A stretch of 64,000 nucleotides of DNA, from IMG/VR virus record IMGVR_UViG_3300027770_000027, positions 124,001 through 188,000 of that record; one strand, written 5' to 3'. Below, in pieces: positions 5,881-60,579 of this stretch (its first letter is position 1; every line of letters begins with the position of its first letter). A program made the translations under genes and the position numbers. The notes below the pieces were generated by a model, which saw only the letters and a program-made list of their open reading frames with translations, did no database searches and was not told the origin of the DNA.

Positions 5881-5886
5881 ATATTA

Positions 5887-5894
5887 TATTTATA
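5887..5894 (-). promoter_or_regulatory. T4-type late promoter TATAAATA
   Basis: Perfect consensus 6 nt upstream of the ATG at 5880. Confidence 0.8.
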
Positions 5895-5921
5895 GGTAAT
5901 GTGAACTATTTGAAATTATTT

Positions 5922-7337: not shown

Positions 7338-7346
7338 ATGTTATAT

Positions 7347-8696
7347 TTACCAAGAAATAGTTAATGTTGCAGACCCGTTTCCAGTAGTAATTTGTACTGG
7401 AATTGAAGATAATCCTTCTACATTGATTCCAGTATCGTAATTTAAACGAGGGCCTCCAGCAGTTCCAGAGCCTCCAGATCCTCCCGCTCCGCCAAGACCC
7501 AACACGAGAATGCCAGCGTTGCCAGCACCACCTCCGCCGCCTCCACCACCACCTCCGGGTCCAGAGGCAGGATCGTTTACGTAAAAGGCACCGGCGCCGC
7601 CTGCTCCTCCAGTTGAAACGTCAGAATTAACCCGGGCGCATCCTAACCCTCCAGTACCACCAGTACCACCGAGTCCGTTGCCAGTATCTGGGGTTGCATT
7701 TGGAGTTACATAAGGATCTGTTTGGCCAGCTCCTCCAAGTCCTCCAAGACCCTCACCATTACCCGCTAAACCGGGTCTACCATTATAAATTCCGCCACCG
7801 CCGCCGCCACCACCACCGAATCCTCCAAGACCTCCAGTGCCTCCCGGAAAAGTGTATTGACCCACTATTACAGATTTACCAGGATCCCCGTTAGCACCAT
7901 TGGCTCCATTAGCACCATCAGACCCGTCTGTTGGAAGACTAGATTCTGGATCTGTGTAACCATCAAGGCCGTTTTCTCCGTTGTGTCCTGGTTCTCCGGC
8001 GGCACCAACGCCAGTGTCTCCGTTTAATCTAAGCCATCTTACCCCAGATGGTATTATAAAATTAAAAGAAGTCACAGAATTAACAGTTGTAGAACCTCCG
8101 GAATTGTATGGAACTGAAGTTGTTTGATTTCTTGGCACCCATTCAGAAGTGGCAGAATTCCATTTCAAAACTTGTCTGTTCTGAGCAGAGTTGTTTGATA
8201 TACTTCTAGATTGGAGGAAAGAAGCAGATCCTCCACCGGGAGCACCTGTTAAAGTTCTTACAGAAATTTTCGCTCGAGCTGGTGGCGCAGTAGGAAAGGT
8301 GATGGTTCCTCTATTTGCTTCAGAAATAGTATAATCAGAAGCAGATTGTGTAATGCCTCCAACTGTGACTATATAAGACTGACTATCAATACCGTTGTAT
8401 CCACTAAGAGGAAAAAAACTAACTCTCACCCCAGTACCGTAAAATTCATTGGCATCTACTCCTCTTAAATTGGAAAAGTCTCTTGGCACTAAAACTATAT
8501 TAGTCAAACTAGTACCGTCTCCAAATATAGCTGAAGTAGCACTTACGGTGGTTGTAAAAAGGGTATTGGGTAATGTTGATGTTAAATTACTACCAATAGC
8601 AAAAGAACTCAGATGGGTAACATTACTGTTAGAACCACCTAAGACCCCACTATAGAGCGGATCAACCATCCCTAGACTGACTTTAGTAAGACTCAT
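7347..8696 (-). CDS. Glycine-rich fibre/adhesin protein (paralog 2)
   Basis: Same architecture as 5922-7337; ends IPVQITTGNGSATLTISW. Confidence 0.7.
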   Translation of the reverse strand: MSLTKVSLGMVDPLYSGVLGGSNSNVTHLSSFAIGSNLTSTLPNTLFTTTVSATSAIFGDGTSLTNIVLVPRDFSNLRGVDANEFYGTGVRVSFFPLSGYNGIDSQSYIVTVGGITQSASDYTISEANRGTITFPTAPPARAKISVRTLTGAPGGGSASFLQSRSISNNSAQNRQVLKWNSATSEWVPRNQTTSVPYNSGGSTTVNSVTSFNFIIPSGVRWLRLNGDTGVGAAGEPGHNGENGLDGYTDPESSLPTDGSDGANGANGANGDPGKSVIVGQYTFPGGTGGLGGFGGGGGGGGGIYNGRPGLAGNGEGLGGLGGAGQTDPYVTPNATPDTGNGLGGTGGTGGLGCARVNSDVSTGGAGGAGAFYVNDPASGPGGGGGGGGGGAGNAGILVLGLGGAGGSGGSGTAGGPRLNYDTGINVEGLSSIPVQITTGNGSATLTISW

Positions 8697-17698: not shown

Positions 17699-20239
17699 TT
17701 AAACAAACCATTTTGTAATTTCTGTAGGAGTTCTGACAGGGACATTTAAAGGTCCAGAAATATTATTAACTGAATCTGAAGCAGTCAAAAACAGACGATT
17801 TTTTGTATCTTTTATAAGAGTGCCATAAGCATCTGAACCGTTGCCAAAGAATTCTACTTGAGATACATAATTGATAGCAACAGCACTAAGAAACGGACTA
17901 GCTTGAGCAAACGTGGTGTATTGGTTGGGAGCTCTGTAACCTGCTAAATGTAAAAAGTTATCCGTGGTAATTCCTCCCAGCAGTGAAGCTCCACTACCAT
18001 TATCACTAGATACTAATTTGGAAAATTTAACACCAGAGTCAAATGCATAGGAAATCGGAGTAGCAACTGAATAAGAAGTAGTTGTTGTTCCTAGTCCCAA
18101 TTGTCCGTTAACATTATATCCCCAAGAGTATATCTTACCAGTCTGTGTAAGAGCCATGCAACTGACGTACTCTCGTCCACCAGTTGACACAAAATCTATT
18201 GCATTGGTTACATTACTCACTTGTTTAAAGAATGACGCTGAGGTGAATGCATAATTACTCCCCAACGCTCCATTAATATTAGAACCACATGCCCATATAG
18301 TAGCATCATTTTTTAAAGCATATACCACTGAATTATCAAAAAAACTATTGCGTAAAATTTTTGAAACACCGGTAAATTGTGAGCCGGCAGCTATTAAAGC
18401 CGCACTAAAATAATAATTACTTGTAGTGGTTCCAAAAGTTCCCTGTCCCAATTGTCCGTAGTGATTAAATCCCGCCGAATAAAGAAGATTATTTTTTAAA
18501 GCCAATGTGTTAAAATCTTTGGCAAATATTTGAGACACATTTGAAGACATTGCTGGTACTAAAGTCGGAACGTATACTGGATTGGCATGTCCTAAACCAC
18601 ACTGGCCATAGGCATTGTTACCCCATGTGAATAATTTGCCTAAAGAGGTCATGACAGCAAAATTAGCAACTATAGGCTTAGACACCGGCAAGTTCATTCC
18701 ACCACTAAGTAATGATCCGGTCCAGTGCTTGGTAAGATCTGAAGAAGTGCCCATCTGGGGTATGGCGTAGTCAAAATCTGATACAAATGGCTGACTAGCT
18801 TCTGATGGAAATAAAACCTTTTTAAGTTGGTATTCTGTAGCATTTGCCGAACCACAACTCAATTGTCCCTGAGCATTATCACCAGCAAACCACAAAGTAC
18901 CATCACTTAGTAATGCTCCTAGGTGGTTTTTACTAATAATGACCTTGGTTATGTTAACAGAAGGATTTTTTAAATTGTAATTATTGGCAAATGGAAATAC
19001 AACAGGAGGCCACACACTGGCAGGTGCTCCTGGTGCGGTGTTTGTTCCATTTCCCCATACCAATATTCTATTGTCACTAGTCACCACAGCTGAATTAAAC
19101 ATCCCTCCACTGTGATGGGCTATGCTCTTGATATAAGTGGTTTGCAAAGCAGCTGAGGTGATAGCAGTTCCGTCTGCAAATGTCACTCCACTCAGAGCAC
19201 TAAAACTACCACTCATAGAAATGCCGCCGTTTAAAGTTTGTATACAAGTACTGGCAACTGAGGTTTTAAGAGTGTTGGTGGTTTTTACCAAGTTGGTATC
19301 TGGGTCTACTATTATCGTAGATCCGTCAACATTGAGACAAACGGTTGAAGTTCCTATAGTGCGAGTAAGGCCTCCTCCGAAACCATACCCCAAACATAGT
19401 TTATTACTACCATTAATTTTAATTGAGTCTGCATCGACGCATACTCCTATTTTATTAGCAGAGTATCCAATGGCGCCAGCAGTCTCTACAGAAAGAGAGG
19501 TTTGTAACTTGCCGGCAACAATTTTAATGGTACTATTATCAGGAGCAACAGAAAGAGTTTGACTAGTGGTATCATAAGCTAATCCGTCTCCAAAGTTATA
19601 TTTTCGAGCAGGATCTAATTGGATAGCACCGTTGATGATCTTGATGGTATCATTATCCAAGATTGGGACTACATCCCAAGTAGGGATTACAGCCGTGGAA
19701 TCATAAACAGAATTAAGACCACTACCAAATCTATATGTAGTAAAAAGATTCCCAGATAAAACTATAATTTTACTACCATCTGCCGATAGAGCCGAAAATA
19801 TAGAATATAAGTTAGAGTAATTGTTAACCAATTCTCCAGCTTGATTTAAACAGATAGTGTTGTTGTCTACACAGGCCGTTACCAGACTACCCAACTGTTT
19901 TAAACCAGCGCCGTAAGATAATGTTGCTCCCTGGGTACCTGTAAAGTTTTCTGCAGCAACCGTTCCATGGACACAGATACTGCCATTGAAAATAGAAGTG
20001 CCTCCACGAGCATCAATAGGAGTGGTTCCGTATGCACAAATTCCGGTATTCTGGCTATAGAAATAACCAGCAACTGCGCTCAAGGGAGCCACCGCACTTA
20101 ATGCTCCATTAAGAACAAAATCCCCTTGGAAGGGGCTGTCCGGACTAGCAATTGGATCATGTCCTGCATCTGGATTTGCAGAATTTGTATAAGTGTGGTG
20201 ATTGCGTCTGTGGTATTTGGAATGAAAACGGTCACTCAT
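17699..20239 (-). CDS. Fibre protein with C-terminal RCC1-like beta-propeller
   Basis: DNxTIKI shaft repeats; WGxNxxGQxGLG RCC1 repeats. Confidence 0.8.
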   Translation of the reverse strand: MSDRFHSKYHRRNHHTYTNSANPDAGHDPIASPDSPFQGDFVLNGALSAVAPLSAVAGYFYSQNTGICAYGTTPIDARGGTSIFNGSICVHGTVAAENFTGTQGATLSYGAGLKQLGSLVTACVDNNTICLNQAGELVNNYSNLYSIFSALSADGSKIIVLSGNLFTTYRFGSGLNSVYDSTAVIPTWDVVPILDNDTIKIINGAIQLDPARKYNFGDGLAYDTTSQTLSVAPDNSTIKIVAGKLQTSLSVETAGAIGYSANKIGVCVDADSIKINGSNKLCLGYGFGGGLTRTIGTSTVCLNVDGSTIIVDPDTNLVKTTNTLKTSVASTCIQTLNGGISMSGSFSALSGVTFADGTAITSAALQTTYIKSIAHHSGGMFNSAVVTSDNRILVWGNGTNTAPGAPASVWPPVVFPFANNYNLKNPSVNITKVIISKNHLGALLSDGTLWFAGDNAQGQLSCGSANATEYQLKKVLFPSEASQPFVSDFDYAIPQMGTSSDLTKHWTGSLLSGGMNLPVSKPIVANFAVMTSLGKLFTWGNNAYGQCGLGHANPVYVPTLVPAMSSNVSQIFAKDFNTLALKNNLLYSAGFNHYGQLGQGTFGTTTSNYYFSAALIAAGSQFTGVSKILRNSFFDNSVVYALKNDATIWACGSNINGALGSNYAFTSASFFKQVSNVTNAIDFVSTGGREYVSCMALTQTGKIYSWGYNVNGQLGLGTTTTSYSVATPISYAFDSGVKFSKLVSSDNGSGASLLGGITTDNFLHLAGYRAPNQYTTFAQASPFLSAVAINYVSQVEFFGNGSDAYGTLIKDTKNRLFLTASDSVNNISGPLNVPVRTPTEITKWFV

Positions 20240-31821: not shown

Positions 31822-31826
31822 GTTGG

Positions 31827-31838
31827 TAAATATTTATA
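31827..31838. promoter_or_regulatory. Palindromic late-promoter element between divergent genes
   Basis: TAAATATTTA gives TAAATA on both strands; TATAAATA on the minus strand. Confidence 0.6.
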
Positions 31839-31857
31839 GCAAAACCCTCTATAATGT

Positions 31858-39381: not shown

Positions 39382-39433
39382 ATTTGATATTGTTAAATAT
39401 TTATACTTAAAGGGTGTCCTATCAACAATTTGC

Positions 39434-51242: not shown

Positions 51243-51983
51243 TTATAATACTGTGCAATTATATTTTTGCCAATCAATGATTCGCGAATATTGTAGAGGA
51301 TCTACCTTTTTAAGTTGGATCCAGCCTGCCAATCTTGCTGAACAACTTGGACATTCTCCACATGACTTTTCGTGTTCGGTATAGCAAGTACGAGTTTGTG
51401 TAAAATCTACACCCAATTCAATTCCATATTCTATAATTTCTTTTTTTGTTTTATCAATTAAAGGTGCTTTAATTTCTATTTGTTTGCGCCTGTTCAAAGA
51501 AAGAATAGTATTTAACCGGTTCCTAAATCCTGGTGTACAATCCCAGAACCCAGAAGTATCATCTGCTTTGGCAGCTCCGTATAGAACATGTTCTGCTCCT
51601 ACACTTTCTGCCATACCAATTGCCAAAGACAAAAATATCATATTTCTATTGGGAACGTATGCAGTATTTTGTGGATCTCCGATAACCTCTTTCATTTTAG
51701 GAACATCTACGTCATCTCTTGTCAAGGCTGAATCAAATTTTAAAAATTTTAAAGCTAATGGAAATCTACTATACTTTATTTTTTCAGCATGTTTTGATTT
51801 AAAAATAATATTTGTAATATAATCCTCTGCTCTGGTTAATTCACTGATATTTCTTTGTCCGTAATCTATACCTAAAGCATATACTTGTTCATAATTTGTC
51901 AATGCATGATGCAAAACAACTGTGCTATCCATGCCACCACTGTATAAAACAACACAAGACTTCGGAGAAAACGATGTATCCAT
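51243..51983 (-). CDS. queC: 7-cyano-7-deazaguanine synthase
   Basis: SGGMDS, YGQRN, YVPNRN, DC, and TCY...CGECPSC Zn site. Confidence 0.93.
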   Translation of the reverse strand: MDTSFSPKSCVVLYSGGMDSTVVLHHALTNYEQVYALGIDYGQRNISELTRAEDYITNIIFKSKHAEKIKYSRFPLALKFLKFDSALTRDDVDVPKMKEVIGDPQNTAYVPNRNMIFLSLAIGMAESVGAEHVLYGAAKADDTSGFWDCTPGFRNRLNTILSLNRRKQIEIKAPLIDKTKKEIIEYGIELGVDFTQTRTCYTEHEKSCGECPSCSARLAGWIQLKKVDPLQYSRIIDWQKYNCTVL

Positions 51984-52001
51984 ATGGTAAATATAGTATA
52001 A

Positions 52002-52571
52002 ATGAAAACTTCGAAGAAATCTAGCAAAAAGAATCAAAAAGTGTATAGCAAAGCACAGAAAAGTGAAGTTGCACGAATTTTAAAGTCAAATCAGCAAGAA
52101 TGTGGGTGTGATGAATCTTATGTTCCATTTCTTAAAAGTTTTATCAAACATTTAGTAAGAGAAGCAGATGAAGCTCCAGCTGTAGAACCCCAGGACCCAC
52201 AAAGTTTTACACAAGATCAAAATCAAAAAGATTTTAAGGGATCTTTAGAGCCATCTACACAGCCAGACCAATTTGATACAGAAGGAACTGATCCAAATCT
52301 GGCTGCTGATGCTATTGCTTCTATTACAGAATGGTCGGGTAGATTGGAGGAGTTTGCAAAATTCTTAAATAGTCCGGATAGCCAGTCTTTACATGCTACA
52401 TTAGCAGCTCAGGATCGTCCGGGTTCTTTGTTAAGAGGAGTTACTCGTAAAGCATCTGATAGTATTACACGTATTGCAGGAGAAGTAGAAAAACTTAAAG
52501 AGGTTCTTAATCAATTTATTATTATGGCTCCTAAAAAACAAAGAGATACAGATCAACTTAAAATGGCTTAA
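52002..52571 (+). CDS. Hypothetical late protein (possible internal head protein)
   Basis: 189 aa; TAAATA at 51988-51993. Confidence 0.65.
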   Translation: MKTSKKSSKKNQKVYSKAQKSEVARILKSNQQECGCDESYVPFLKSFIKHLVREADEAPAVEPQDPQSFTQDQNQKDFKGSLEPSTQPDQFDTEGTDPNLAADAIASITEWSGRLEEFAKFLNSPDSQSLHATLAAQDRPGSLLRGVTRKASDSITRIAGEVEKLKEVLNQFIIMAPKKQRDTDQLKMA

Positions 52572-53533
52572 ACTTCATACAGAGAATCTAAAATTAAACT
52601 GTAAGGTATTTCGTCTATTCCTTCTTTTACTGCCCATTCATTGAAATCTTTGAATGGACTATTAGAAGGCCAGCGGAATACCTTTTGTTTTGCTGTTAAT
52701 AGCTCAAAAATCTTCTGCTTGGCAGCATCATCTTTGCGTGGATTGTCTAATATCCATATTTTTTCATGTAAAGGAAACTCTGATAACTGTTTTTGCTGTA
52801 ATGGTGTTAGATTTAGACCTGCCAAACTTACTCCATTTTGAACAAACATAGAATCTAGAGGACCTTCAAACAAGAAAATAGAATCCAATTCAATTTTTAC
52901 ACGCTCAATAGCATATACTGACTTATCATATCCCACTTTATTGAGATATCGAGGCTCAGAACCATCTAGAGAACGGGTTTGATACCAAACTATACGGTTA
53001 TTTCTATCTGTGTAAGGAATACATAGACGATTTTTGTGAAAAGAATCTGTTAAGCTAATATAATATGAAGAACTTTTATTTATAGCCGTATTTAATCTAC
53101 GATGCTCTATATAATCCAGTGCTTTCTGAAAATACTGATTAGTTCCATAATATATTTGTTGCTGTTTGTCATTAACATTGATGGAATCATATGGTAATAT
53201 GGGTTTTTCCTTAGAAGTTTGTTTACTTCCTTTATAATTCTCAGATACATCTATAGATATATCTCCGCTAAATGCTTCTGCTTCAATTTCTTCCCGAGAA
53301 AGACCTGACGACAATTCTATATAAGTCTGTGAATTCCATCCACGACCACAATTAAAACAATAAAAAGAGTTGGTTGAAGGATAATAGAATAATCTCTTTT
53401 TCTTCAACCAACTCTTTCCTTCTCTACAAATATTACAAGAAGCGTTGTAATTTCCGTCAAACTTTCGAAATACGGGTTCTCCCGAATGAGTATAAAACTT
53501 ACTCAACACATAATGTCCCGGGAGCTGCTTCAT
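52568..53533 (-). CDS. gp61: DNA primase (gp61-like)
   Basis: CNIC...CFNC Zn ribbon, RLCIP, FEGPLDSMF TOPRIM, KDFNE. Confidence 0.92.
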   Translation of the reverse strand: MKQLPGHYVLSKFYTHSGEPVFRKFDGNYNASCNICREGKSWLKKKRLFYYPSTNSFYCFNCGRGWNSQTYIELSSGLSREEIEAEAFSGDISIDVSENYKGSKQTSKEKPILPYDSINVNDKQQQIYYGTNQYFQKALDYIEHRRLNTAINKSSSYYISLTDSFHKNRLCIPYTDRNNRIVWYQTRSLDGSEPRYLNKVGYDKSVYAIERVKIELDSIFLFEGPLDSMFVQNGVSLAGLNLTPLQQKQLSEFPLHEKIWILDNPRKDDAAKQKIFELLTAKQKVFRWPSNSPFKDFNEWAVKEGIDEIPYSLILDSLYEV

Positions 53534-53553
53534 ATAAGCAGTATATAGGAATT

Positions 53554-54633
53554 TTAACCTTTAATCACGCTCATAGATTTGAAAATATTACTGTATAAAT
53601 GTTTGAAATCTACACTATCTTCTAATCCCATCTTTGGGGTCATGCCTCCAAGTGATTGTCGATGCAAATTTGCCAATTCTGCCTGCTTAGCTCTGTCTAA
53701 ATCTGCCGCCTGGTCTTCCTCAGATCCCATATCTGCTAGTGTTCCTCCGTTATCTTGCTTGGGAATGGCTGTCCATCCATCATCTGTTCTTTTAATTAAA
53801 TCTTTTCTGCCCAATTCTCCGGCTATTCCTCTTAGATATGATTTAATAGTAGCATCAGAGTCAGCATACTGTCTGGGAATTAAATTTCTATCAATCTTAG
53901 AAACCAATTCATTGTTCTCTAGAGGACCTTCTGCTTCAATCAGATCTAATAGAGCTTGTTGAATGTCTGATAAATCTAATTCTGCTCCTTCTTTTCCAGT
54001 AAATCCCGCTTTATCCGGTGTTGCTGCTGGTTCCTCATTTTTTTGAGAAGGAGTTTCTTCTGGTTCTGGTTCGACTGGAACCTCTTCAGTTTCTCCAGGT
54101 GTTTCTTCGGGAGAAACCTCTGTTTCAGCTGGTGTGTTTTCAGCTTCTTCGGATCCAGATCCTTCTTCATCTTTAATATCTTCTGAAGAAGCTTGTGGTA
54201 GGGCGGCTCCTGCTGGGTTGTTTCCAGATTCATCTGGAGTTTGAGTAATTAAATTCAAGCCGTAAAGATAATTTCCAATAGTTTTCATCCATTTTTCAGC
54301 TGGGGAAGCAGACCAACCTGCTGTATGTTTGAGAAAATCAAAAATAGCAGCCTGCATCTTTGCATTATCAGGATATGTTTTACCAGAACCATGTCCACTC
54401 TTAAGAAAAAGCTCTAAGGCCTTCCAAGCGTCCTGGCCATTATACTTTCCATCTCGAGCATTAGGCTTGCGTCGTTCACCAGAACGAGGATCTACATCAG
54501 TTTCAGTAAACTTATTTATCCAATCTGGTTTAGGCGCTCTGCTAACTGCGTCTAGAGCAGGAATTGTGATAGCGCCACGAGGAGCAGCCATTTCTTCTAA
54601 ATAATTTTCACAAAGATTTTCAAATAAACTCAT
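53554..54633 (-). CDS. Hypothetical acidic late protein (possible internal protein; wHTH-like segment)
   Basis: Starts MSLFENLCENYLEE; E/P-rich linker; TAAATA 6 nt upstream. Confidence 0.65.
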   Translation of the reverse strand: MSLFENLCENYLEEMAAPRGAITIPALDAVSRAPKPDWINKFTETDVDPRSGERRKPNARDGKYNGQDAWKALELFLKSGHGSGKTYPDNAKMQAAIFDFLKHTAGWSASPAEKWMKTIGNYLYGLNLITQTPDESGNNPAGAALPQASSEDIKDEEGSGSEEAENTPAETEVSPEETPGETEEVPVEPEPEETPSQKNEEPAATPDKAGFTGKEGAELDLSDIQQALLDLIEAEGPLENNELVSKIDRNLIPRQYADSDATIKSYLRGIAGELGRKDLIKRTDDGWTAIPKQDNGGTLADMGSEEDQAADLDRAKQAELANLHRQSLGGMTPKMGLEDSVDFKHLYSNIFKSMSVIKG

Positions 54634-54642
54634 ATATCTTAT

Positions 54643-55281
54643 TTATGGTGTCCAAATGTCAGATATCAAACTTTGTTCTTCACCAAATTGTTTACCATTC
54701 TCCTGTACGTACATGGTTGTTAATGCAATTCGCTGTTCTCTGGTACCAAAAATTTCAATAAAAGCAGCTGAATCTCCTTTTGGAAAAATTCTTCCATCCC
54801 CTTGCAAATAAGACTGATTAAAAACTTTAAAAATGTTATCAATTTCTTCTCGGTACACAGGATCTGTATCTCTAATACCATCTGCAACAATTTCAACTGG
54901 AGAAGCTTTGGTTAGTGGTAGAAAAAAAAGTATATCATATAGTCTCAATGTTTCTCTCACGAGGATTCTAGAAGTATCTAAGAACTTTTCAGACACCAAG
55001 CCATTCAAATGAAGCCAAGAAGAGTATGCTAGATTGTCTAGTACACACCGATCAAAAATTACAAAATCATTTTTACTATACTGAGTGGCTTGTTCTGCTA
55101 AAAAATCTAAAATTTGTCTTTGTGATTCTTCAGAGCCTTCTTTGTTGAGAGGGATATTGTTTTCCTTAACAAGATCTCTGTAAGTCTTCTCTGGAGTTTT
55201 ATACATCGGCCATTTTGCTAGAAAATCTTGAATGTATGTAGATTTACCAACACATTGGGTTCCTATTACAGCTATTTTCAT
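54643..55281 (-). CDS. P-loop nucleotide kinase (AAA_28-like), second copy
   Basis: GTQCVGKST, DRCVLDNLAYS, DGIR. Confidence 0.8.
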   Translation of the reverse strand: MKIAVIGTQCVGKSTYIQDFLAKWPMYKTPEKTYRDLVKENNIPLNKEGSEESQRQILDFLAEQATQYSKNDFVIFDRCVLDNLAYSSWLHLNGLVSEKFLDTSRILVRETLRLYDILFFLPLTKASPVEIVADGIRDTDPVYREEIDNIFKVFNQSYLQGDGRIFPKGDSAAFIEIFGTREQRIALTTMYVQENGKQFGEEQSLISDIWTP

Positions 55282-55284
55282 AAA

Positions 55285-55533
55285 TTAGTGTTTTAATAGT
55301 TCTGGAAAAAACTTTGTAAGTGTATTTTCATTCATAATTTCTTGTTTGTCAAGAAAAACATTGCATAAAGGTACATTGGGATGGGAACATCTTAGAGAAA
55401 CTGCCAAATTAATCATTTTTTCAATATCTTCACTATAAAGAGTATGATTTACACTAGGAATAGCACAAAAAAGTAGTGCTTCCAAAATTAATTGGACGTT
55501 TTCTTTAACTAATAACGGGTTGGTATTGGACAT
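55285..55533 (-). CDS. Hypothetical protein
   Basis: 82-aa ORF with AAGGA upstream. Confidence 0.55.
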   Translation of the reverse strand: MSNTNPLLVKENVQLILEALLFCAIPSVNHTLYSEDIEKMINLAVSLRCSHPNVPLCNVFLDKQEIMNENTLTKFFPELLKH

Positions 55534-55559
55534 ATGTCCTTTATACCCTTATTTTTAAA

Positions 55560-56294
55560 TTAGTCACCTGAAGTTACCATCATAGAGCCGGTACTATTAG
55601 TTGCTAGTATCTTTTTAATATTGTTATAGGTATCATCTGCGGCTTTTAATGCAGCTTCTAATTGAGAAGGATCTTGAGATAACTGTTCCATAGTATCTAA
55701 ATTGTCTGGAAGGGTCTCTAAAGTAGAATCTATAAAAGGATCTGCCGTTTGAACTTTATCCATTGGGGTGCTTAATGATTGAATACATACACCAATCATT
55801 AAAATTCTAGTTGCGGCATTCATTTTATGAATGACATCATCAATATTTACTTTTAGATTTGCATACTGTCCACCGTCTTTAATTCTTACAGCTGTTAAAA
55901 GAAGTTGTATGGCTTTTGCCGCCGTTTCAGGATTTCCTAATTGTTCATCTATTTTATCCAATTCTGTTAAACAGCGATTAATAACATCTTCTTTTGATTT
56001 TTCTCTTCTTATGCTATCTACATCTGTCAAGAAACACGCAGCTGCTAATTGTACTAATTGAATTCTGGCCAAAGCATCTTTTCCTGGTAGCACTGAAGTA
56101 TCCCCTTCTGGTGTTCCCGCTACAGGTGGTGTAGTGGCTGCGTCTGCTTGTGTTTCGGGTTCAGCTGGATTTAGTGCATCTTCCTCGTTTAATATTTTTT
56201 TAAGAAAATTGTCAAATTTTGAATATCTGTTTGAATTTTTACTCAAAGATATTTCTTCTTGTATTAAAGAAGTTAGAAATTTATTAGAAGCCAT
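55560..56294 (-). CDS. Hypothetical late protein (possible internal protein)
   Basis: KFDNFLKKILNEE; TAAATA 5 nt upstream. Confidence 0.65.
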   Translation of the reverse strand: MASNKFLTSLIQEEISLSKNSNRYSKFDNFLKKILNEEDALNPAEPETQADAATTPPVAGTPEGDTSVLPGKDALARIQLVQLAAACFLTDVDSIRREKSKEDVINRCLTELDKIDEQLGNPETAAKAIQLLLTAVRIKDGGQYANLKVNIDDVIHKMNAATRILMIGVCIQSLSTPMDKVQTADPFIDSTLETLPDNLDTMEQLSQDPSQLEAALKAADDTYNNIKKILATNSTGSMMVTSGD

Positions 56295-56305
56295 AATTCT
56301 ATTTA

Positions 56306-57670
56306 TTAAGCAATAACCTCTTTGACCACATTTCCGTATACATCTGTGAGCCTAAATGGTCTACCATTGTATTCATAAACAAGTTTGGTGTGATCAAATC
56401 CCATCAAAGCAAGCATGGTTGCATGGAGATCGTGAATATGAACAATATCTTTGACTGATTTACCTCCAGTTTCATCAGTCTCTCCGTAACGCTGCCCACC
56501 TTTAACTCCACCTCCGGCCATCCAAACACTAAAGGCTTTGCCGTTGTGATCTCTTCCTGGAGCGCCTACTCCACCACCTGCCTGGACTGTACGACCAAAT
56601 TCTCCACCCCAAACCACAAGAGTAGAATCCAGCATCCCTCTTTGCTTCAAGTCTGTAAGAAGAGCACCAAATGGCTGATCGTATCTTCCTGCAGTTCTTG
56701 TCATGGCGTTCTTAATATCCATGTGATGATCATAGCCACCTACATTCACCTGCACAAAACGAACTCCACGTTCAACCAAACGTCTTGCAAGCAACATCTT
56801 AGCCCCTTCCTCAGTTTCACCGTACAAAGCCTTTGCTTCTGCAGATTCTTTAGAGATATCAAAAGCATCAGTAGCTTCAGTTTGCATTTTAAATGCTGTT
56901 TCAAAAGCCTCGATGCGTGACTCAAGCTGGGCATCTCTTTGAAGTTTTGCGAGATGGTTTGAGTTCAGTGTATTTGCAAAATTAATCTGCCTTCTTTGTC
57001 TTTCAAGAGTAGAAAATTCGCTGCGAATGTTGGCTAAAATCTGTTCTGCTTTTATTCCTCTACGATATGATACGTTACAACCCTGATACATTCCTGGCAA
57101 GAAAGCACATTGTCTCCATTCTGAAGCTCCGTTTAAGGAAATAAATCCAGGCATGCTTTGATTCTCTGTACCCAGCCCATACACCATCCAAGATCCCATG
57201 CTAGGCTTGGAAAGCTGAGCAGATCCAGTTGCCATCATTTTTTGAGCAATATTATGATCTGGAATTTCTGTCTGCATGCTGTTAATGATAGCAATATCAT
57301 CAGCATGGCTTCCCAATTGAGACCAAACTTCTGAATAATGAATACCAGATTTTCCAAACTGTTTGAACTCAAAAGGAGAAGCTAGCAAATTGCCAAACTC
57401 ATGTTTTACTCCATCTCTCTTTTGAAGTTCTGGTTTGTAATCAAACGTGTCAACATGAGATGGTGCTCCAGTTGCAAACAAGTGAATGATAGATTTTGCT
57501 TTCACTGGCCAGTGAGGCTTTTTTGGAGCAGTTGGAGAAACTGCTTCAGCTGTCATTGGATTTAAACCATAAAGAGAAGCCAATGAAAGTCCTCCAAGTC
57601 CCCAACCAAAGTCGGTAAGGAATTCTCTACGTGTTTGTGGGTCGCTATTGTGATGTCCGCAGTCGCTCAT
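56306..57670 (-). CDS. DUF1501-family protein with twin-arginine signal
   Basis: TRREFL, PSHVDTFDYKP, ARRLVERGVRFVQ, YDHH, GEFGRT, GRDHN, DLHAT. Confidence 0.92.
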   Translation of the reverse strand: MSDCGHHNSDPQTRREFLTDFGWGLGGLSLASLYGLNPMTAEAVSPTAPKKPHWPVKAKSIIHLFATGAPSHVDTFDYKPELQKRDGVKHEFGNLLASPFEFKQFGKSGIHYSEVWSQLGSHADDIAIINSMQTEIPDHNIAQKMMATGSAQLSKPSMGSWMVYGLGTENQSMPGFISLNGASEWRQCAFLPGMYQGCNVSYRRGIKAEQILANIRSEFSTLERQRRQINFANTLNSNHLAKLQRDAQLESRIEAFETAFKMQTEATDAFDISKESAEAKALYGETEEGAKMLLARRLVERGVRFVQVNVGGYDHHMDIKNAMTRTAGRYDQPFGALLTDLKQRGMLDSTLVVWGGEFGRTVQAGGGVGAPGRDHNGKAFSVWMAGGGVKGGQRYGETDETGGKSVKDIVHIHDLHATMLALMGFDHTKLVYEYNGRPFRLTDVYGNVVKEVIA

Positions 57671-57676
57671 AAAATA

Positions 57677-58936
57677 TTAGGCTAAAAGTTCTTTTACTAC
57701 AGTCCCATTATACACTATTGCTACAGGACGTCCATCTGGAGTTTCTAGTTTAGAATCGGGATTAATTCCAATTTGATTATACATCGTAGCTGCAAGATTT
57801 TCTGGTGATAGAGCTGACTCTTCGACATCTCCGCCAGTAGCATCAGATGCTCCGTGAATATAACCTCTCTTAATACCTCCACCAGCTAGAGCTACTGAGA
57901 ATACTCTCGGCCAGTGATCTCTTCCGCCGTCTTTATTAATTTTAGGAGTACGACCAAATTCAGAACTTACCATAACAAGAGTAGAATCTAACATGCCACG
58001 TTGATCTAGATCTGTAATAAGAGCAGCATATGCTTGATCAAATGCAGGTAAGGTTTTGTTCATGTTTGCACCAATATTAGTATGCATGTCCCAACCACCA
58101 TAAGTGACAGATACAAAGCGTACTCCAGACTCTACCAACCGACGAGACATTAATAGTCTTTGACCTGCTTGATTAAGGCCATAAGCTTCTCTTAGGGCAT
58201 CTGATTCTTTAGTTAAATCAAAAGCTCCCTTCGCCTTTGGAGAAGAAATTAAATCATATGCTTGCTGATAGAAAGTATCCATTGCAGCAAGGTTGTCACT
58301 CTTTTCGAGATATCTAAAATGTTTATCTACGGTATCAAGAATACTACGTCTTTTATCAAATCGTTCTTCACTAACAGTTGATTGCAAATCTCTTACCTTA
58401 AATCCTGGAGCAGCTGGATCAGAGCCAAGACTAAAAGGACCGTAAGCGTTAGATAAATAACCAGTACCAGCGACTTCCCCATGAGCGTTAGGAACAGAAA
58501 CATAAGCTGGCAAACTATTACGACCACCTAATTGTTGAGCTGTTACTGAACCAAAAGAAGGATATGTCACAGCAGGAGATGGACGATAACCAGTAAACAT
58601 AGTGGATGTACCTCTTTCATGAGCTGCATCTCCGTGAGTCATGGAACGGACTACTGAAATTTTATCTGCAATTTTTGCTGTCTTTGCTAAATTTTCTGAA
58701 AAGTGGACTCCGGGAATTACTGTCTGCACAGATTTGAGAGGCCCTCTATACTCTGCAGGGGCTAAAGGTTTTGGATCCCACATTTCTTGCGCTGCAGCTC
58801 CACCGGGCAAATAAATGTGAATGACTGATTGAGCTTTTGGGGTGAGGGGCGACTCTGCTTGAAGTTTTAAGGCGTCTCCTAACGAAAGACCTAAACCTCC
58901 AAATAGACCAGTGTAAAGAAAATCACGTCTGTTCAT
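57677..58936 (-). CDS. DUF1501-family protein with twin-arginine signal
   Basis: MNRRDFL, WDPKP, SRRLVESGVRFV, GGWDMH, SEFGRTP, GRDHWP. Confidence 0.92.
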   Translation of the reverse strand: MNRRDFLYTGLFGGLGLSLGDALKLQAESPLTPKAQSVIHIYLPGGAAAQEMWDPKPLAPAEYRGPLKSVQTVIPGVHFSENLAKTAKIADKISVVRSMTHGDAAHERGTSTMFTGYRPSPAVTYPSFGSVTAQQLGGRNSLPAYVSVPNAHGEVAGTGYLSNAYGPFSLGSDPAAPGFKVRDLQSTVSEERFDKRRSILDTVDKHFRYLEKSDNLAAMDTFYQQAYDLISSPKAKGAFDLTKESDALREAYGLNQAGQRLLMSRRLVESGVRFVSVTYGGWDMHTNIGANMNKTLPAFDQAYAALITDLDQRGMLDSTLVMVSSEFGRTPKINKDGGRDHWPRVFSVALAGGGIKRGYIHGASDATGGDVEESALSPENLAATMYNQIGINPDSKLETPDGRPVAIVYNGTVVKELLA

Positions 58937-58941
58937 ATATC

Positions 58942-58947
58942 TATTTA
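58942..58947 (-). promoter_or_regulatory. Late-promoter motif TAAATA before the DUF1501 pair
   Basis: Overlaps the upstream stop codon; 5 nt before the ATG. Confidence 0.6.
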
Positions 58948-59220
58948 ATCTAGATCTGGGTCCGTTGCCTTAATAAGATAGGAATGACCGTCTTTTCTCA
59001 TCATCGCAAAAATGTTTAAAATGGATTTAGAAAACCACAATTGTTTATCATCATCTATACAAGCTAGATATCTATCATAGATTAAATACAATATAGAAGC
59101 AACCCACATTGGATCCATGTCATGTGTCTGTATATCTTTAATGGCTGGTAACCACATTTGATTTTTTTCAGAATAAATTCTTACAATTTTTATAATTTCT
59201 TCTATTTCTTTATCTTCCAT
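58945..59220 (-). CDS. Hypothetical protein
   Basis: 91-aa ORF in operon-like packing. Confidence 0.55.
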   Translation of the reverse strand: MEDKEIEEIIKIVRIYSEKNQMWLPAIKDIQTHDMDPMWVASILYLIYDRYLACIDDDKQLWFSKSILNIFAMMRKDGHSYLIKATDPDLD

Positions 59221-59221
59221 G

Positions 59222-60109
59222 TTATTTTTCCTTTAGGTAATCTAAAAATAATTGTTTATCAAACAAATTGTCGAGATCATCAAAAGGACATTCATATAAA
59301 CGGCGTCCAATCCAATCATAATCTTCTAAATAAGAATCTACAAGATGTCTATAATTAGGTGCTAATTGGGGACCCACATTAACATTACTAGAATATCCAA
59401 AAACTGTAGGAGAATTGCTTATCCAAGCAACTGCTGCCTTTTTATCTAAGGCGGTTGCTACGTGTTGAATTACAGAATCTATTAATATAAACTTATCTGA
59501 TAGATAGGTATAACAAAACAAATTACGTAAATTATCAGTTACTTGAATAGTGTTCTCTAATTTTGGTTGATTCTCTCTGCGTATGTGTAAAATTTTATTA
59601 AAATCCTTATGAACAGTATTAACTAAGTCTTGGGCAATTGCAAGTGGAATATCTCTGGCCCAAGAATAATCTACATCTTGTCCATCTGCTCCTCCGTTAG
59701 TTTGTAACAATAAAACTGGTCCTTGTTTGTTTACCAATTTAGCAGCATTAATGAGTTCTCTTTGAGTTAATGTTAATTGAGGTTTAATTTGTACACATTT
59801 AATACCAAATAGGTCACACCATACTTGCACTAAATGACTTTTTTTGTTTATAAAGTCACTACAATGATAAGGTTCGGTTCTTAAAATAATTGAATTTTTA
59901 TCCTTAACAAAGTCATCATAAAAATATGCAAATTGTCCAGTTTTATAAACTCTATAAATTAATGGATTATGAAGGAACACTTCCGGCCAGGCAGTTACCA
60001 CTATTAGTTTATGATCTGGATAAGCAGCTTTGATAGAAACACAAACAGCTGTTGCCATTACACTTTTTCCAGCGCCTCCGTCAATGTGAAAAATTACATA
60101 CTTGTCCAT
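59222..60109 (-). CDS. GT-B (GT9 / heptosyltransferase-like) glycosyltransferase
   Basis: DGGAGK..MAT, PEVFLHNP, IDSVIQH, PTVFGY. Confidence 0.65.
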   Translation of the reverse strand: MDKYVIFHIDGGAGKSVMATAVCVSIKAAYPDHKLIVVTAWPEVFLHNPLIYRVYKTGQFAYFYDDFVKDKNSIILRTEPYHCSDFINKKSHLVQVWCDLFGIKCVQIKPQLTLTQRELINAAKLVNKQGPVLLLQTNGGADGQDVDYSWARDIPLAIAQDLVNTVHKDFNKILHIRRENQPKLENTIQVTDNLRNLFCYTYLSDKFILIDSVIQHVATALDKKAAVAWISNSPTVFGYSSNVNVGPQLAPNYRHLVDSYLEDYDWIGRRLYECPFDDLDNLFDKQLFLDYLKEK

Positions 60110-60579
60110 TTTTTTGTTATTTTAATGATAAATTCTGTTTCTTCACCGGTGAGATCTACACATTTTAATCCTTTATAAAATCTTCCAGAAGTATTAAAAT
60201 TAAAAATATCTGGAATATTGTCGTAAAAATAAGTATTACAATTTTTTTTAAAAATTTTGTATATAGATTTTATTACAAATTCTTTATTGTCTATATAATT
60301 GTCAAAAATATCTGGTATAGTGTAGTTTTTACTAACTGTCAAAATCTTAATATTATAATTCTGATAAACAATTCTAATATCAAATATAATATCAGAAATT
60401 TCTTTTTCAACAAAAAATTTAAAATATTTTTCTCTACCGGTAATTTTTTTATTTTTAAGTAAATCCCATTCAGTGTACTTGTTAACAATACGGGTTAAAA
60501 AGCTATCCAAGTAATTATGGAAAGGGAAAATTATGATTCTCTGGGGTAAGTGTACAACCAGATGATCTTTAATGTTCAT
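60094..60579 (-). CDS. Hypothetical protein
   Basis: AT-rich ORF; likely start MNIKDHL. Confidence 0.5.
   Translation of the reverse strand: MNIKDHLVVHLPQRIIIFPFHNYLDSFLTRIVNKYTEWDLLKNKKITGREKYFKFFVEKEISDIIFDIRIVYQNYNIKILTVSKNYTIPDIFDNYIDNKEFVIKSIYKIFKKNCNTYFYDNIPDIFNFNTSGRFYKGLKCVDLTGEETEFIIKITKKWTSM

What the first reader, a model, noticed from the sequence alone, without database searches (positions are those of the whole stretch)
56306..58947. Phage-encoded tandem pair of Tat-exported DUF1501 proteins behind a late-promoter motif
Seen: two intact, divergent DUF1501 genes 6 nt apart, both with twin-arginine signals (NRRDFL, TRREFL) and conserved D/H motifs. A TAAATA sits 5 nt before the first ATG, as for structural genes, and the flanks are clearly phage genes. 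Known: DUF1501 is an uncharacterised family, heavily expanded in Planctomycetes/Verrucomicrobia and often paired with DUF1549/1553 or DUF1800; no such partner is seen here. Inference: the phage sends two folded, probably metal-binding proteins through the host Tat route late in infection. Possible roles are periplasm remodelling, nutrient scavenging, superinfection exclusion or hijacking a host DUF1501 complex. It also points to the host phylum.
Basis: partly seen in the sequence, partly recalled or inferred. Interest (0 to 1): 0.8.

Follow-up and report, generated by a model that had tools for sequence, protein, structure and literature searches.

The report
Phage-borne Tat-targeted DUF1501 gene pair
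An abundant, uncultured T4-like lake phage carries two long-resident, strongly conserved copies of a bacterial periplasmic enzyme-like protein of unknown function (DUF1501), captured from Verrucomicrobia-type bacteria, which gives a host clue and a new handle on a 20-year-old unknown protein system.

Summary
On the minus strand, A (57677-58936, 419 aa) and B (56306-57670, 454 aa) are intact, full-length DUF1501 proteins, 33% identical and 6 nt apart. Each has a twin-arginine-type signal peptide. They sit inside a 227-kb T4-like freshwater phage genome.

They are not an assembly artefact: the same gene order recurs in independent assemblies, codon usage is fully phage-like, and dN/dS is at most about 0.1. 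The TAAATA motif before A is part of a genome-wide element placed 4-9 nt before 26% of start codons, mostly of structural genes. It is conserved upstream of A in related phages.

New findings:
- A descends from the DUF1501 subunit of the PVC four-gene module (DUF1501 / PPC / PSCyt-PSD / PSCyt-WD40). Its nearest cellular relative is verrucomicrobial.
- B is the type that pairs with a PSCyt1-PSCyt2-PSD1 cytochrome, and some related phages carry that cytochrome.
- A and B also occur singly in other phages, so the pair is not obligate.

The fold is sulfatase-like (alkaline-phosphatase superfamily), but the sulfatase nucleophile motif is absent. The function is still unknown. My best reading is an auxiliary metabolic gene set exported by Tat that works with the host's PSCyt/PSD machinery. 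I found no paper describing this.

The parts
58942..58947 (-). TAAATA element 5 nt upstream of A's ATG. Its TAA (58945-58947) is the stop codon of the upstream ORF.
   Evidence: Sequence. Same motif 4-9 nt before 15 of 57 starts. Conserved upstream of A in L004, L005, L007, L029, L032.
57677..58936 (-). Paralogue A, DUF1501, 419 aa. A-type clade with a degenerate N-motif, G45-G-A-A-A-Q-E-M-W-D54-P-K-P. Invariant H106, D283, H285, R329, R339, H341.
   Evidence: Pfam E 5.7e-111, full length. AF2 pLDDT 91.6. Sulfatase-like fold. Motifs. dN/dS 0.05-0.12.
58856..58936 (-). Predicted Tat signal peptide of A (residues 1-27): RRDFL at residues 3-7, a 13-residue uncharged Gly-rich h-region, and c-region ...KLQA followed by E.
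   Evidence: Feature analysis. MNRR[DE]F[LI] conserved in 116 of 120 orthologues. Lower pLDDT for residues 1-30.
57671..57676 (-). 6-nt spacer between A's stop and B's start, with no separate TAAATA. B is presumably co-transcribed with A.
56306..57670 (-). Paralogue B, DUF1501, 454 aa. Canonical N-motif G68-A-P-S71-H72-V-D74-T-F-D77-Y-K-P. Invariant H139, D314, H316, R360, R373, H375.
   Evidence: Pfam E 2.9e-134, full length. AF2 pLDDT 84.7. Sulfatase-like fold. Motifs. dN/dS about 0.07-0.10.
57542..57670 (-). Predicted Tat signal peptide of B (residues 1-43): conserved n-region DCGxH, TRREFL at 13-18, h-region FGWGLGGLSLASLYGL, AEA followed by V.
   Evidence: Residues 1-44 have pLDDT below 50. 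Orthologues carry RR, KR or RK.
56300..56305 (-). Next TAAATA element, directly after B's TAA stop and 5 nt before the ATG of the downstream 244-aa gene.
58945..59220 (-). 91-aa ORF upstream of A. It is a conserved neighbour in related phages, and the metatranscriptome contig ends at its start.
59222..60109 (-). 295-aa ORF (phrog_8954, function unknown), a conserved neighbour upstream of the pair in related T4-like phages.
55560..56294 (-). 244-aa ORF downstream of B, a phage gene of unknown function that has its own TAAATA element.

Best explanation
A and B are auxiliary genes of an abundant clade of uncultured freshwater T4-like phages. They were captured long ago from PVC bacteria, most likely Verrucomicrobiota. 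Each encodes a metal-site-bearing, sulfatase-fold (alkaline-phosphatase-superfamily) DUF1501 protein with a twin-arginine signal peptide. Shown: identity, phage residence, conservation, origin, fold and motif pattern. Inferred: the genes are transcribed from the phage's TAAATA element together with structural (late) genes, and B is co-transcribed with A. The proteins fold, and probably load metal, in the cytoplasm, and the host Tat system exports them to the periplasm. There they do not act as a self-contained pair. Each substitutes for or boosts the DUF1501 subunit of a host system. A serves the four-gene DUF1501 / PPC / PSCyt1-PSCyt2-PSD1 / PSCyt1-WD40 module. B serves a two-gene DUF1501 + PSCyt1-PSCyt2-PSD1 cytochrome system. 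This keeps a periplasmic ester-cleaving, redox-linked nutrient-processing step running during infection, plausibly on sulfated or phosphorylated organic substrates. The logic resembles cyanophage psbA or phage phoA/phoD/pstS.
For: Phage residence: identical synteny in four independent assemblies; a DNA contig crosses the locus without a break; GC3 is 0.21 and 0.31, like phage genes (0.19-0.25), against a median of 0.78 in cellular orthologues. Selection: dN/dS about 0.05-0.12, and both are more conserved than neighbouring genes. Origin: the best 80 GTDB matches (of about 600 found) are nearly all PVC MAGs; the phage A clade is monophyletic (support 100) and sister to a Chthoniobacter sequence (93); B's nearest Atlas clusters are mainly Verrucomicrobiota. 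Module: in 34 cellular loci an A-type gene is followed by PPC, PSCyt-PSD and PSCyt-WD40 genes, as in PMC3542564. Relatives carry B directly followed by a PSCyt1-PSCyt2-PSD1 protein with two invariant CxxCH motifs. Separability: A-only, B-only, A+B and B+PSCyt phages exist. Tat: [RK]R-x-F-L is conserved, including natural KR variants. Fold: S1 sulfatases, LtaS and AP are the top structural matches. Expression: a lake metatranscriptome contig covers the pair at higher depth than the upstream DNA. TAAATA is shared with baseplate, protease and sheath genes.
Against: No biochemical function is known for any DUF1501 or PSCyt/PSD protein (PMC3542564, PMC5615132), so the nutrient-processing role is conjecture. 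No host genome is linked directly. The Chthoniobacter sister contig is only 3.7 kb, and deeper branches have weak support. TAT-signal HMMs do not fire. RNA evidence is one library, kept as contigs, and DNA carry-over is not excluded. TAAATA could be a translation-initiation element rather than a promoter. Late expression is unusual for nutrient-acquisition AMGs. A has lost the Ser-His of the canonical N-motif and could be non-catalytic.
Confidence: 0.5

Rival explanations
1. The pair is a stand-alone periplasmic scavenging enzyme set. A and B, alone or as a heterodimer, hydrolyse phosphate or sulfate esters to supply P or S for phage replication, independently of any PSCyt/PSD partner, like phage phoA or phoD.
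For: Alkaline-phosphatase-superfamily fold. Invariant D/H/R residues. Tat targeting, as for PhoD and PhoX (own knowledge). No PSCyt/PSD partner in this window or contig. Many phages carry B or A without a PSCyt gene nearby. Phage P-acquisition AMGs are an established category (PMC10987575).
Against: No Ser/Thr/formylglycine nucleophile motif. In cells these DUF1501 types are almost always linked to PSCyt/PSD genes, and some phages carry the cytochrome too. A and B occur apart, which argues against an obligate heterodimer.
Confidence: 0.25
2. The proteins remodel the envelope, block superinfection or assist lysis. Made late and sent to the periplasm, they would modify or cleave envelope components such as lipid head groups, glycans or receptors.
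For: TAAATA element shared with structural genes. Periplasmic targeting. Structural neighbours include LtaS and YejM/PbgA. Glycosyltransferase- and sugar-modifying genes lie near the module in L029. A secreted met-zincin-like protease sits between A and B in L029.
Against: The structural similarity is generic to the superfamily (TM 0.3-0.4). The genes derive from a conserved cellular module linked to cytochromes, not to envelope biogenesis. Neighbouring genes vary between phages. No defence-system models match.
Confidence: 0.15
3. A is a pseudoenzyme, acting as a scaffold, substrate-binding or regulatory subunit, while B is the catalyst. This reading can coexist with the explanations above.
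For: The canonical GGPSHxDTFDPKP becomes GGAAAQE[TM]WDPKP in phage A: Ser to Ala, His to Ala, Asp to Glu. The cellular A-clade already lacks the Ser. B keeps the canonical motif.
Against: A retains every family-invariant residue (H106, D283, H285, R329, R339, H341) and is under strong purifying selection. The role of the Ser-His in catalysis is unknown.
Confidence: 0.2
4. The locus is an assembly chimera or cellular contamination, and the DUF1501 genes are not really part of the phage genome.
For: GC of the two genes (0.41-0.43) is slightly above the local phage average.
Against: The same junctions appear in at least four independent assemblies from different samples. GC3 is phage-like. Structural genes have equal or higher GC (MCP 0.47). 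33 further IMG/VR viral loci carry orthologues of A or B. Phage-specific TAAATA elements flank the genes.
Confidence: 0.01

Closest known systems
PVC DUF1501 / PSCyt / PSD gene modules (Kamneva et al. 2012, PMC3542564; He et al. 2017, PMC5615132)
   Same: Same Pfam family. The phage proteins have the same Tat-type signal. A is 55-66% identical to the DUF1501 of the four-gene module. In phage relatives, B is followed by a PSCyt1-PSCyt2-PSD1 protein exactly as in the cellular two-gene clusters.
   Different: Here the genes sit in a phage genome without the PPC, PSCyt-PSD or PSCyt-WD40 partners. They have phage codon usage and a phage expression element. A has lost a further motif residue (His to Ala). 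The function of the cellular system is itself unknown.
Phage periplasmic nutrient-acquisition AMGs (phoA, phoD, pstS; e.g. PMC10987575)
   Same: They are host-derived genes for exported proteins carried by phages, flanked by viral genes and under purifying selection. PhoD is also a Tat substrate (own knowledge), and PhoA belongs to the same structural superfamily.
   Different: There is no sequence relationship to PhoA, PhoD or PhoX. No activity has been demonstrated. There are two paralogues, and they link to a cytochrome-containing module. No pho-box or P-stress link was examined.
S1 formylglycine sulfatases and other alkaline-phosphatase-superfamily enzymes (LtaS, phosphonate monoester hydrolase, AP)
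   Same: The overall alpha/beta fold is shared (Foldseek probability 1.0). The strand ending in GEFGR aligns with the sulfatase GDHG metal-ligand strand.
   Different: TM is only 0.3-0.4 and identity about 10%. The C/S-x-P/A-x-R nucleophile motif is absent, and mature A has no cysteine at all. An invariant His occupies what, judging from secondary-structure order, may be the nucleophile position. That last point is inference and was not verified on coordinates.
T4-type late promoters (TATAAATA, gp55-dependent; own knowledge)
   Same: The A/T-rich core TAAATA matches the 3' six bases of the T4 consensus. It is found preferentially before structural genes of a T4-like phage.
   Different: It lies only 4-9 nt from the start codon, implying leaderless or near-leaderless mRNAs or a translational role. 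The first two consensus positions are variable. gp55 was not looked for, and no transcription start was mapped.

Membership tests
Pfam DUF1501 (PF07394) | Full-length match above the gathering threshold (27 bits) | tested here: met
   A 371.9 bits and B 448.6 bits, both covering profile 1-390 of 390.
Pfam DUF1501 (PF07394) | Family-invariant residues (His after the fourth strand, GG[WY]DxH, EFGRT, GRDH) | tested here: met
   All present in A and B and in 119-120 of 120 orthologues of each.
Pfam DUF1501 (PF07394) | Canonical N-terminal motif GGPSHxDTFDPKP | tested here: inconclusive
   B has it (GAPSHVDTFDYKP). A has GGAAAQEMWDPKP, and the cellular A-clade has GGMAHQES[FW]DPKP.
Tat (twin-arginine) substrates | S/T-R-R-x-F-L-K-type motif at the n/h boundary of an N-terminal signal peptide | tested here: met
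   A has N-R-R-D-F-L and B has T-R-R-E-F-L. The motif is conserved in orthologues as RR, KR or RK.
Tat (twin-arginine) substrates | Weakly hydrophobic h-region followed by an AxA-type cleavage site | tested here: met
   A has a 13-residue Gly-rich stretch (mean KD 1.0) then LQA. B has a 16-residue stretch then AEA. Both N-termini are disordered in the AF2 models.
Tat (twin-arginine) substrates | Match to a curated TAT-signal HMM (Pfam PF10518 / TIGR01409) | tested here: not met
   No hit at E<=0.01 in Pfam or at E<=1 in NCBIfam. These very short models often miss true signals.
Tat (twin-arginine) substrates | Tat-dependent export shown experimentally | not testable with these tools
   Needs reporter fusions in tat+ and tat- strains and RR-to-KK mutants.
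DUF1501-PSCyt/PSD module (PVC) | Adjacent gene encoding PSCyt1/PSCyt2 (DUF1549)/PSD1 (DUF1553) | tested here: not met
   None in the window (tblastn) or on this contig (profile scan). Present in relatives L029, L031, L120, L129, L130 and L134 and in 34 cellular loci.
S1 formylglycine-dependent sulfatases | C/S-x-P/A-x-R nucleophile motif in the N-terminal subdomain | tested here: not met
   Absent from B. The only match in A (SDALR at residue 245) lies in the helical insert, and mature A has no Cys. No Pfam Sulfatase hit.
S1 formylglycine-dependent sulfatases | Sulfatase / alkaline-phosphatase alpha/beta fold | tested here: met
   Foldseek top hits are S1 sulfatases, with E 1e-7 to 1e-5 and TM 0.3-0.42.
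Auxiliary metabolic gene (AMG) of a phage | Host-derived non-replicative gene flanked by viral genes on both sides of a viral genome | tested here: met
Auxiliary metabolic gene (AMG) of a phage | Purifying selection and conservation across related phages | tested here: met
   dN/dS at most about 0.12. 13 A-bearing and 20 B-bearing IMG/VR loci. Thousands of orthologues at 70% identity or more.
Auxiliary metabolic gene (AMG) of a phage | Expression during infection | tested here: inconclusive
   One lake metatranscriptome holds the whole pair on a 5.9-kb contig at depth 16.7, against 3-7 upstream. There is no strand or timing information, and DNA carry-over is not excluded.
T4-type late promoter | TATAAATA-like box upstream of late or structural genes | tested here: inconclusive
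   NTAAATA precedes 15 of 57 starts, mainly structural genes, and is absent at primase, helicase and QueC. However, it lies only 4-9 nt from the ATG. gp55 and transcription starts were not examined.

The most novel reading that the evidence does not exclude
A widespread clade of freshwater phages has captured, piece by piece, the PVC-specific periplasmic DUF1501 / c-type-cytochrome (PSCyt-PSD) machinery. Different phages carry A, B, A+B, B+cytochrome, or A+protease+B+cytochrome. They express these genes with their structural genes and export them by Tat to take over a still-unknown periplasmic redox and ester-cleaving pathway of Verrucomicrobiota. The phage 'minimal sets' would then show which subunits are limiting, and would give the first experimental entry point to the function of DUF1501/PSCyt proteins. 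They would also give a marker for verrucomicrobial phages.
Probability: 0.3. Interest if true: 0.75.

Novelty: new variant of a known kind. Interest (0 to 1): 0.6.

Why it matters
DUF1501 and its PSCyt/PSD partners are among the most expanded protein families in Planctomycetota and Verrucomicrobiota, and they have had no known function since they were described in 2004-2012. Abundant lake phages keep ameliorated, strongly conserved copies, sometimes with the cytochrome partner. That argues the system performs a step that limits phage production, and it supplies compact natural variants for biochemical tests. It also gives one of the few sequence-based host clues for a large, uncultured clade of freshwater T4-like phages. 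Finally, it adds a Tat-routed, multi-gene periplasmic system to the catalogue of phage auxiliary genes.

Tried and rejected
- Sequence search of A, B and the family profile against PDB chains found no homologue. Only the GEFGR strand aligned weakly to sulfatases, so residue-level mapping of the active site was not possible. Model coordinates are not exposed by the tools.
- Pfam and NCBIfam TAT-signal HMMs gave no hit. I used motif and feature analysis instead.
I replaced it with a single-protein scan.
- The nearest 50%-cluster representatives P0241 and P0242 sit on contigs of under 3 kb, so their context is uninformative. P0241 turned out to be planctomycete-type, not phage-type.
- The generic sigma-70 promoter and terminator scan was not above shuffled expectation.
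- PADLOC defence models gave no hits, so I dropped a BREX/PglZ-like reading.
- PHROGs has no DUF1501 family. GenBank phages gave only one weak partial hit on a 6.9-kb gut contig.
- Run X3 holds the flanks at 95-99% identity but no A/B pieces. Its coverage is too fragmentary to call a deletion variant.
- An A-B heterodimer could not be modelled, because the structure tool takes single chains only.
Full report
**1. The observation**

The window is part of IMGVR_UViG_3300027770_000027, a 227,352-bp contig. It encodes a Gp23-type major capsid protein, a portal, a prohead protease, a baseplate wedge, a sheath stabiliser, a primase, a helicase and QueC. This makes it a T4-like myovirus. Its capsid protein is only about 35% identical to those of cultured T4-like cyanophages.

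On the minus strand, ORF A (57677-58936, 419 aa) and ORF B (56306-57670, 454 aa) are intact and separated by 6 nt. Both match Pfam DUF1501 over the whole profile (E 5.7e-111 and 2.9e-134). They are 33% identical to each other. A begins MNRRDFL, and B has TRREFL at residues 13-18. Both keep the family-invariant GG[WY]DxH, EFGRT and GRDH motifs.

**2. The genes are really phage genes**

- The same order (295-aa ORF, 91-aa ORF, A, B, 244-aa ORF, 82-aa ORF, AAA_28, 359-aa ORF, primase) occurs with identical proteins in three other assemblies: two JGI samples and one Logan run.
- A DNA run has a 19.9-kb contig crossing the whole stretch without a difference. It may be the source sample, so it is not independent support.
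- GC3 of A (0.21) and B (0.31) is like that of the surrounding phage genes (0.19-0.25). It is far from the 42 cellular orthologues (median 0.78).
- dN/dS against orthologues in other phages is about 0.05-0.12, with dS saturated. dN is lower than for neighbouring phage genes.
- In another lake (run X4), only the A/B segment is retained at 90% identity or more, while the flanks fall below that.

A chimera or a recent capture is excluded.

**3. Distribution**

Cultured-phage resources lack the family. PHROGs gave no hit. Among 50,697 GenBank phage records there was no hit for B and one weak partial hit for A.

Metagenomes, in contrast, hold thousands of proteins at 70-90% identity, many on 170-250-kb contigs. 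IMG/VR holds 13 A-bearing and 20 B-bearing loci of this kind. The runs that contain the sequence are freshwater or lake metagenomes.

The arrangements differ between phages:

- A and B in tandem, as here (also L004, L006, L126).
- A and B with a methyltransferase between them (L007).
- A and B convergent (L011-L013, L015).
- A alone (L005, L032).
- B alone within 7 kb either side (9 loci).
- B immediately followed by a 990-aa PSCyt1-PSCyt2-PSD1 protein (L120, L129, L130, L134).
- A, a met-zincin-like 520-aa protein, B, then PSCyt-PSD (L029, L031).

So A and B are separable units, and an obligate heterodimer is unlikely.

The phage PSCyt-PSD proteins keep two invariant CxxCH haem-c motifs. A profile scan found such a gene on four IMG/VR contigs but not on the window's contig, and tblastn found none in the window.

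A second, unrelated viral lineage (L016-L028) carries a single 409-aa DUF1501 with a KRRDF motif, followed by a small secreted ORF. BFVD holds one auto-annotated 'DUF1501 domain-containing protein [uncultured Caudovirales phage]'. No paper in the searchable library discusses phage DUF1501.

**4. Origin**

An exhaustive search of 1.84 billion cluster representatives shows a gap. The nearest representative is 59% identical and the next are at most 46%.

The scan of GTDB species genomes matched about 600 stretches. The best 80 come almost entirely from PVC MAGs, plus a few from other phyla. None reaches 70% identity. The best, at 55-66%, come from Chthoniobacter, Opitutales, Akkermansiaceae, Verrucomicrobiaceae, Pirellulaceae, Gemmataceae and Phycisphaeraceae.

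In a maximum-likelihood tree the 15 phage A sequences form one clade (SH-aLRT 100). Its sister is the Chthoniobacter sequence (93), within a mainly verrucomicrobial group. That deeper branch has weaker support (88, open). B's nearest Atlas clusters are DUF1501 clusters whose commonest phylum is Verrucomicrobiota.

In 34 cellular loci the A-type gene is followed by three genes: a PPC-domain secreted protein of about 820 aa, a PSCyt1-PSCyt2-PSD1 protein, and a PSCyt1-WD40 protein. This is exactly the four-gene cluster described by Kamneva et al. (PMC3542564). B followed by PSCyt-PSD in phages mirrors their two-gene architecture. In two cellular loci (L054, L057) an A-type gene is adjacent to another DUF1501 paralogue, so tandem DUF1501 genes have cellular precedents.

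**5. The proteins**

AlphaFold2 models are confident: A has pLDDT 91.6 and B has 84.7, with B's first 44 residues disordered. Foldseek places both in the alkaline-phosphatase superfamily. The nearest structures are S1 sulfatases, then LtaS, alkaline phosphatase, phosphonate monoester hydrolase and YejM. The match is distant, at TM 0.3-0.42 and about 10% identity. A profile search aligns only the '...LDxTLV...GEFGR' strand with the sulfatase '...GDHG' metal-ligand strand.

The sulfatase C/S-x-P/A-x-R motif is absent, and mature A has no cysteine. The proteins are therefore not formylglycine sulfatases.

The canonical family motif GGPSHxDTFDPKP is kept in B (GAPSHVDTFDYKP). It reads GGMAHQES[FW]DPKP in the cellular A-clade and GGAAAQE[TM]WDPKP in phage A. 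A may therefore differ in metal binding or catalysis. It nevertheless keeps all invariant residues and is strongly constrained.

**6. Signal peptides**

A has RRDFL at residues 3-7, a 13-residue Gly-rich uncharged stretch, and then KLQA followed by E. B has a conserved n-region (M-x-DCGxH), TRREFL, a 16-residue h-region, and AEA followed by V.

Among 120 orthologues of each, A keeps [NDK]RR[DE]F[LI] in 116. B shows RR in 80, KR in 37 and RK in 2. Conservation of [RK]R-x-F-L, including the naturally tolerated KR variant, is what a Tat constraint predicts. The curated TAT HMMs did not fire, and export itself is untested.

**7. The TAAATA element**

TAAATA is not enriched overall (43 on the minus strand against about 67 expected). 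Even so, it ends 4-9 nt before the ATG of 15 of 57 genes, against about 0.5% of other ATGs.

Bearers include the tail-fibre-like genes at 2.1-16.1 kb, the baseplate wedge, the prohead protease, the sheath stabiliser, A, the 244-aa gene after B, and the 359-aa gene. Primase, helicase, QueC and AAA_28 lack it.

It is conserved 5 nt before A in L004, L005, L007, L029 and L032, although the rest of the upstream sequence differs. B acquires its own copy when it is separated from A (L007, L029). The element is absent in the non-T4-like carriers.

It therefore behaves as a lineage-specific expression signal shared with late or structural genes, resembling the T4 late-promoter core (own knowledge). 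Its closeness to the ATG, and the near absence of Shine-Dalgarno motifs (5 of 57), imply either near-leaderless late mRNAs or a translational role. The TAA of the copy before A is also the stop codon of the preceding ORF.

**8. Expression**

One lake metatranscriptome (X2) holds 97-100% of the sampled words. Its 5,866-nt contig is identical to L002. It covers window 53353-59218 at depth 16.7 and ends at the start of the 91-aa ORF. The next kilobase upstream is fragmentary at depth 3-7. This is compatible with a transcription unit covering the 91-aa ORF, A, B and the downstream genes. However, contigs carry no strand information and DNA carry-over is possible.

**9. Interpretation**

The identity, origin and phage residence of the genes are shown. 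The mechanism is inferred: late co-expression, Tat export, and action in the periplasm alongside host (or, in relatives, phage) PSCyt/PSD proteins. The chemistry is unknown. He et al. link PSCyt genes with sulfatase and carbohydrate-binding contexts in lake Verrucomicrobia (PMC5615132), so processing of sulfated or otherwise esterified organic matter is a reasonable guess.

The rivals are a stand-alone P/S-scavenging hydrolase, an envelope-remodelling or exclusion function, and a non-catalytic A. None can be excluded computationally. The defence-system and chimera readings are rejected.

**10. Verdict**

This is a real, widespread feature that I found described in no paper. It is a new variant of the phage auxiliary-gene theme, involving a PVC-specific protein system of unknown function. 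Interest is moderate to high (0.6). Its value lies in the host link and in making the DUF1501/PSCyt question experimentally approachable.

Noticed in passing
window, genome-wide (e.g. 5881-5895, 31822-31840, 39382-39405, 56300-56305, 58942-58947): NTAAATA ends 4-9 nt before the start codon of 15 of 57 genes, mostly structural, while Shine-Dalgarno-like motifs precede only 5 of 57. This suggests leaderless or near-leaderless late mRNAs, or an unusual translation-initiation element, in this T4-like phage.
   Followed up: partly
L029:14254-17226; L120:8370-11339; L129:8400-11330: Related phages encode a 990-aa PSCyt1-PSCyt2-PSD1 protein with a Sec-type leader and two invariant CxxCH haem-binding motifs. 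This is a phage-encoded c-type cytochrome that would need the host's cytochrome-maturation system.
   Followed up: partly
L016-L028 (e.g. L016:6001-7532): A second, unrelated viral lineage carries a single 409-aa DUF1501 (31% identical to A, begins MKRRDFV). It is followed by a ~100-aa ORF with a signal-peptide-like N-terminus, among replication genes.
   Followed up: partly
L029:11296-12858; L127:4-873: A 520-aa met-zincin-like (HExxH region, Reprolysin_5 / DUF4953) secreted protein sits between A and B in some phages. It is not detectably related to the PPC protein that occupies that position in cellular modules.
   Followed up: partly
window 57631-57670 (B residues 1-13) and orthologues: The n-region of B's signal peptide has a strictly conserved M-x-D-C-G-x-H motif 9-11 residues before the twin arginines. 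Cellular DUF1501 proteins often have C-x-G about 5 residues before RR, whereas phage A has lost this region. Its significance is unknown.
   Followed up: partly
B orthologues P0121-P0240: 37 of 120 phage B orthologues have KR (TKREFL) and 2 have RK instead of RR in the Tat motif. This is a natural series of twin-arginine variants.
   Followed up: partly
window 5922-8696: Two tandem ORFs (471 and 449 aa) in the tail-fibre region have the highest GC of the window (0.44-0.46) and no Pfam or PHROG match. Each has its own TAAATA element.
   Followed up: no
window 2113-5880 and 17699-20239: Two large putative tail or host-recognition proteins carry unusual domains. One is 1255 aa with BNR/Sortilin-Vps10 and a Chlorovirus glycoprotein repeat. 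The other is 846 aa with RCC1 repeats.
   Followed up: no
window 51243-52037: A QueC homologue (E 1e-53) sits next to several small ORFs. It is probably part of a 7-deazaguanine DNA-modification cluster.
   Followed up: no
window 54600-60200 in run X3: A 2023 freshwater run holds both flanks at 95-99% identity but no pieces of A or B. This could be a close relative lacking the pair, or just fragmentary assembly.
   Followed up: partly
L054:5989-8751; L057:8109-11284: In two PVC MAGs (Verrucomicrobiaceae, Schlesneria) the A-type DUF1501 is directly adjacent to another DUF1501 paralogue that is 39-43% identical to phage B. This is a cellular precedent for the tandem arrangement.
   Followed up: partly
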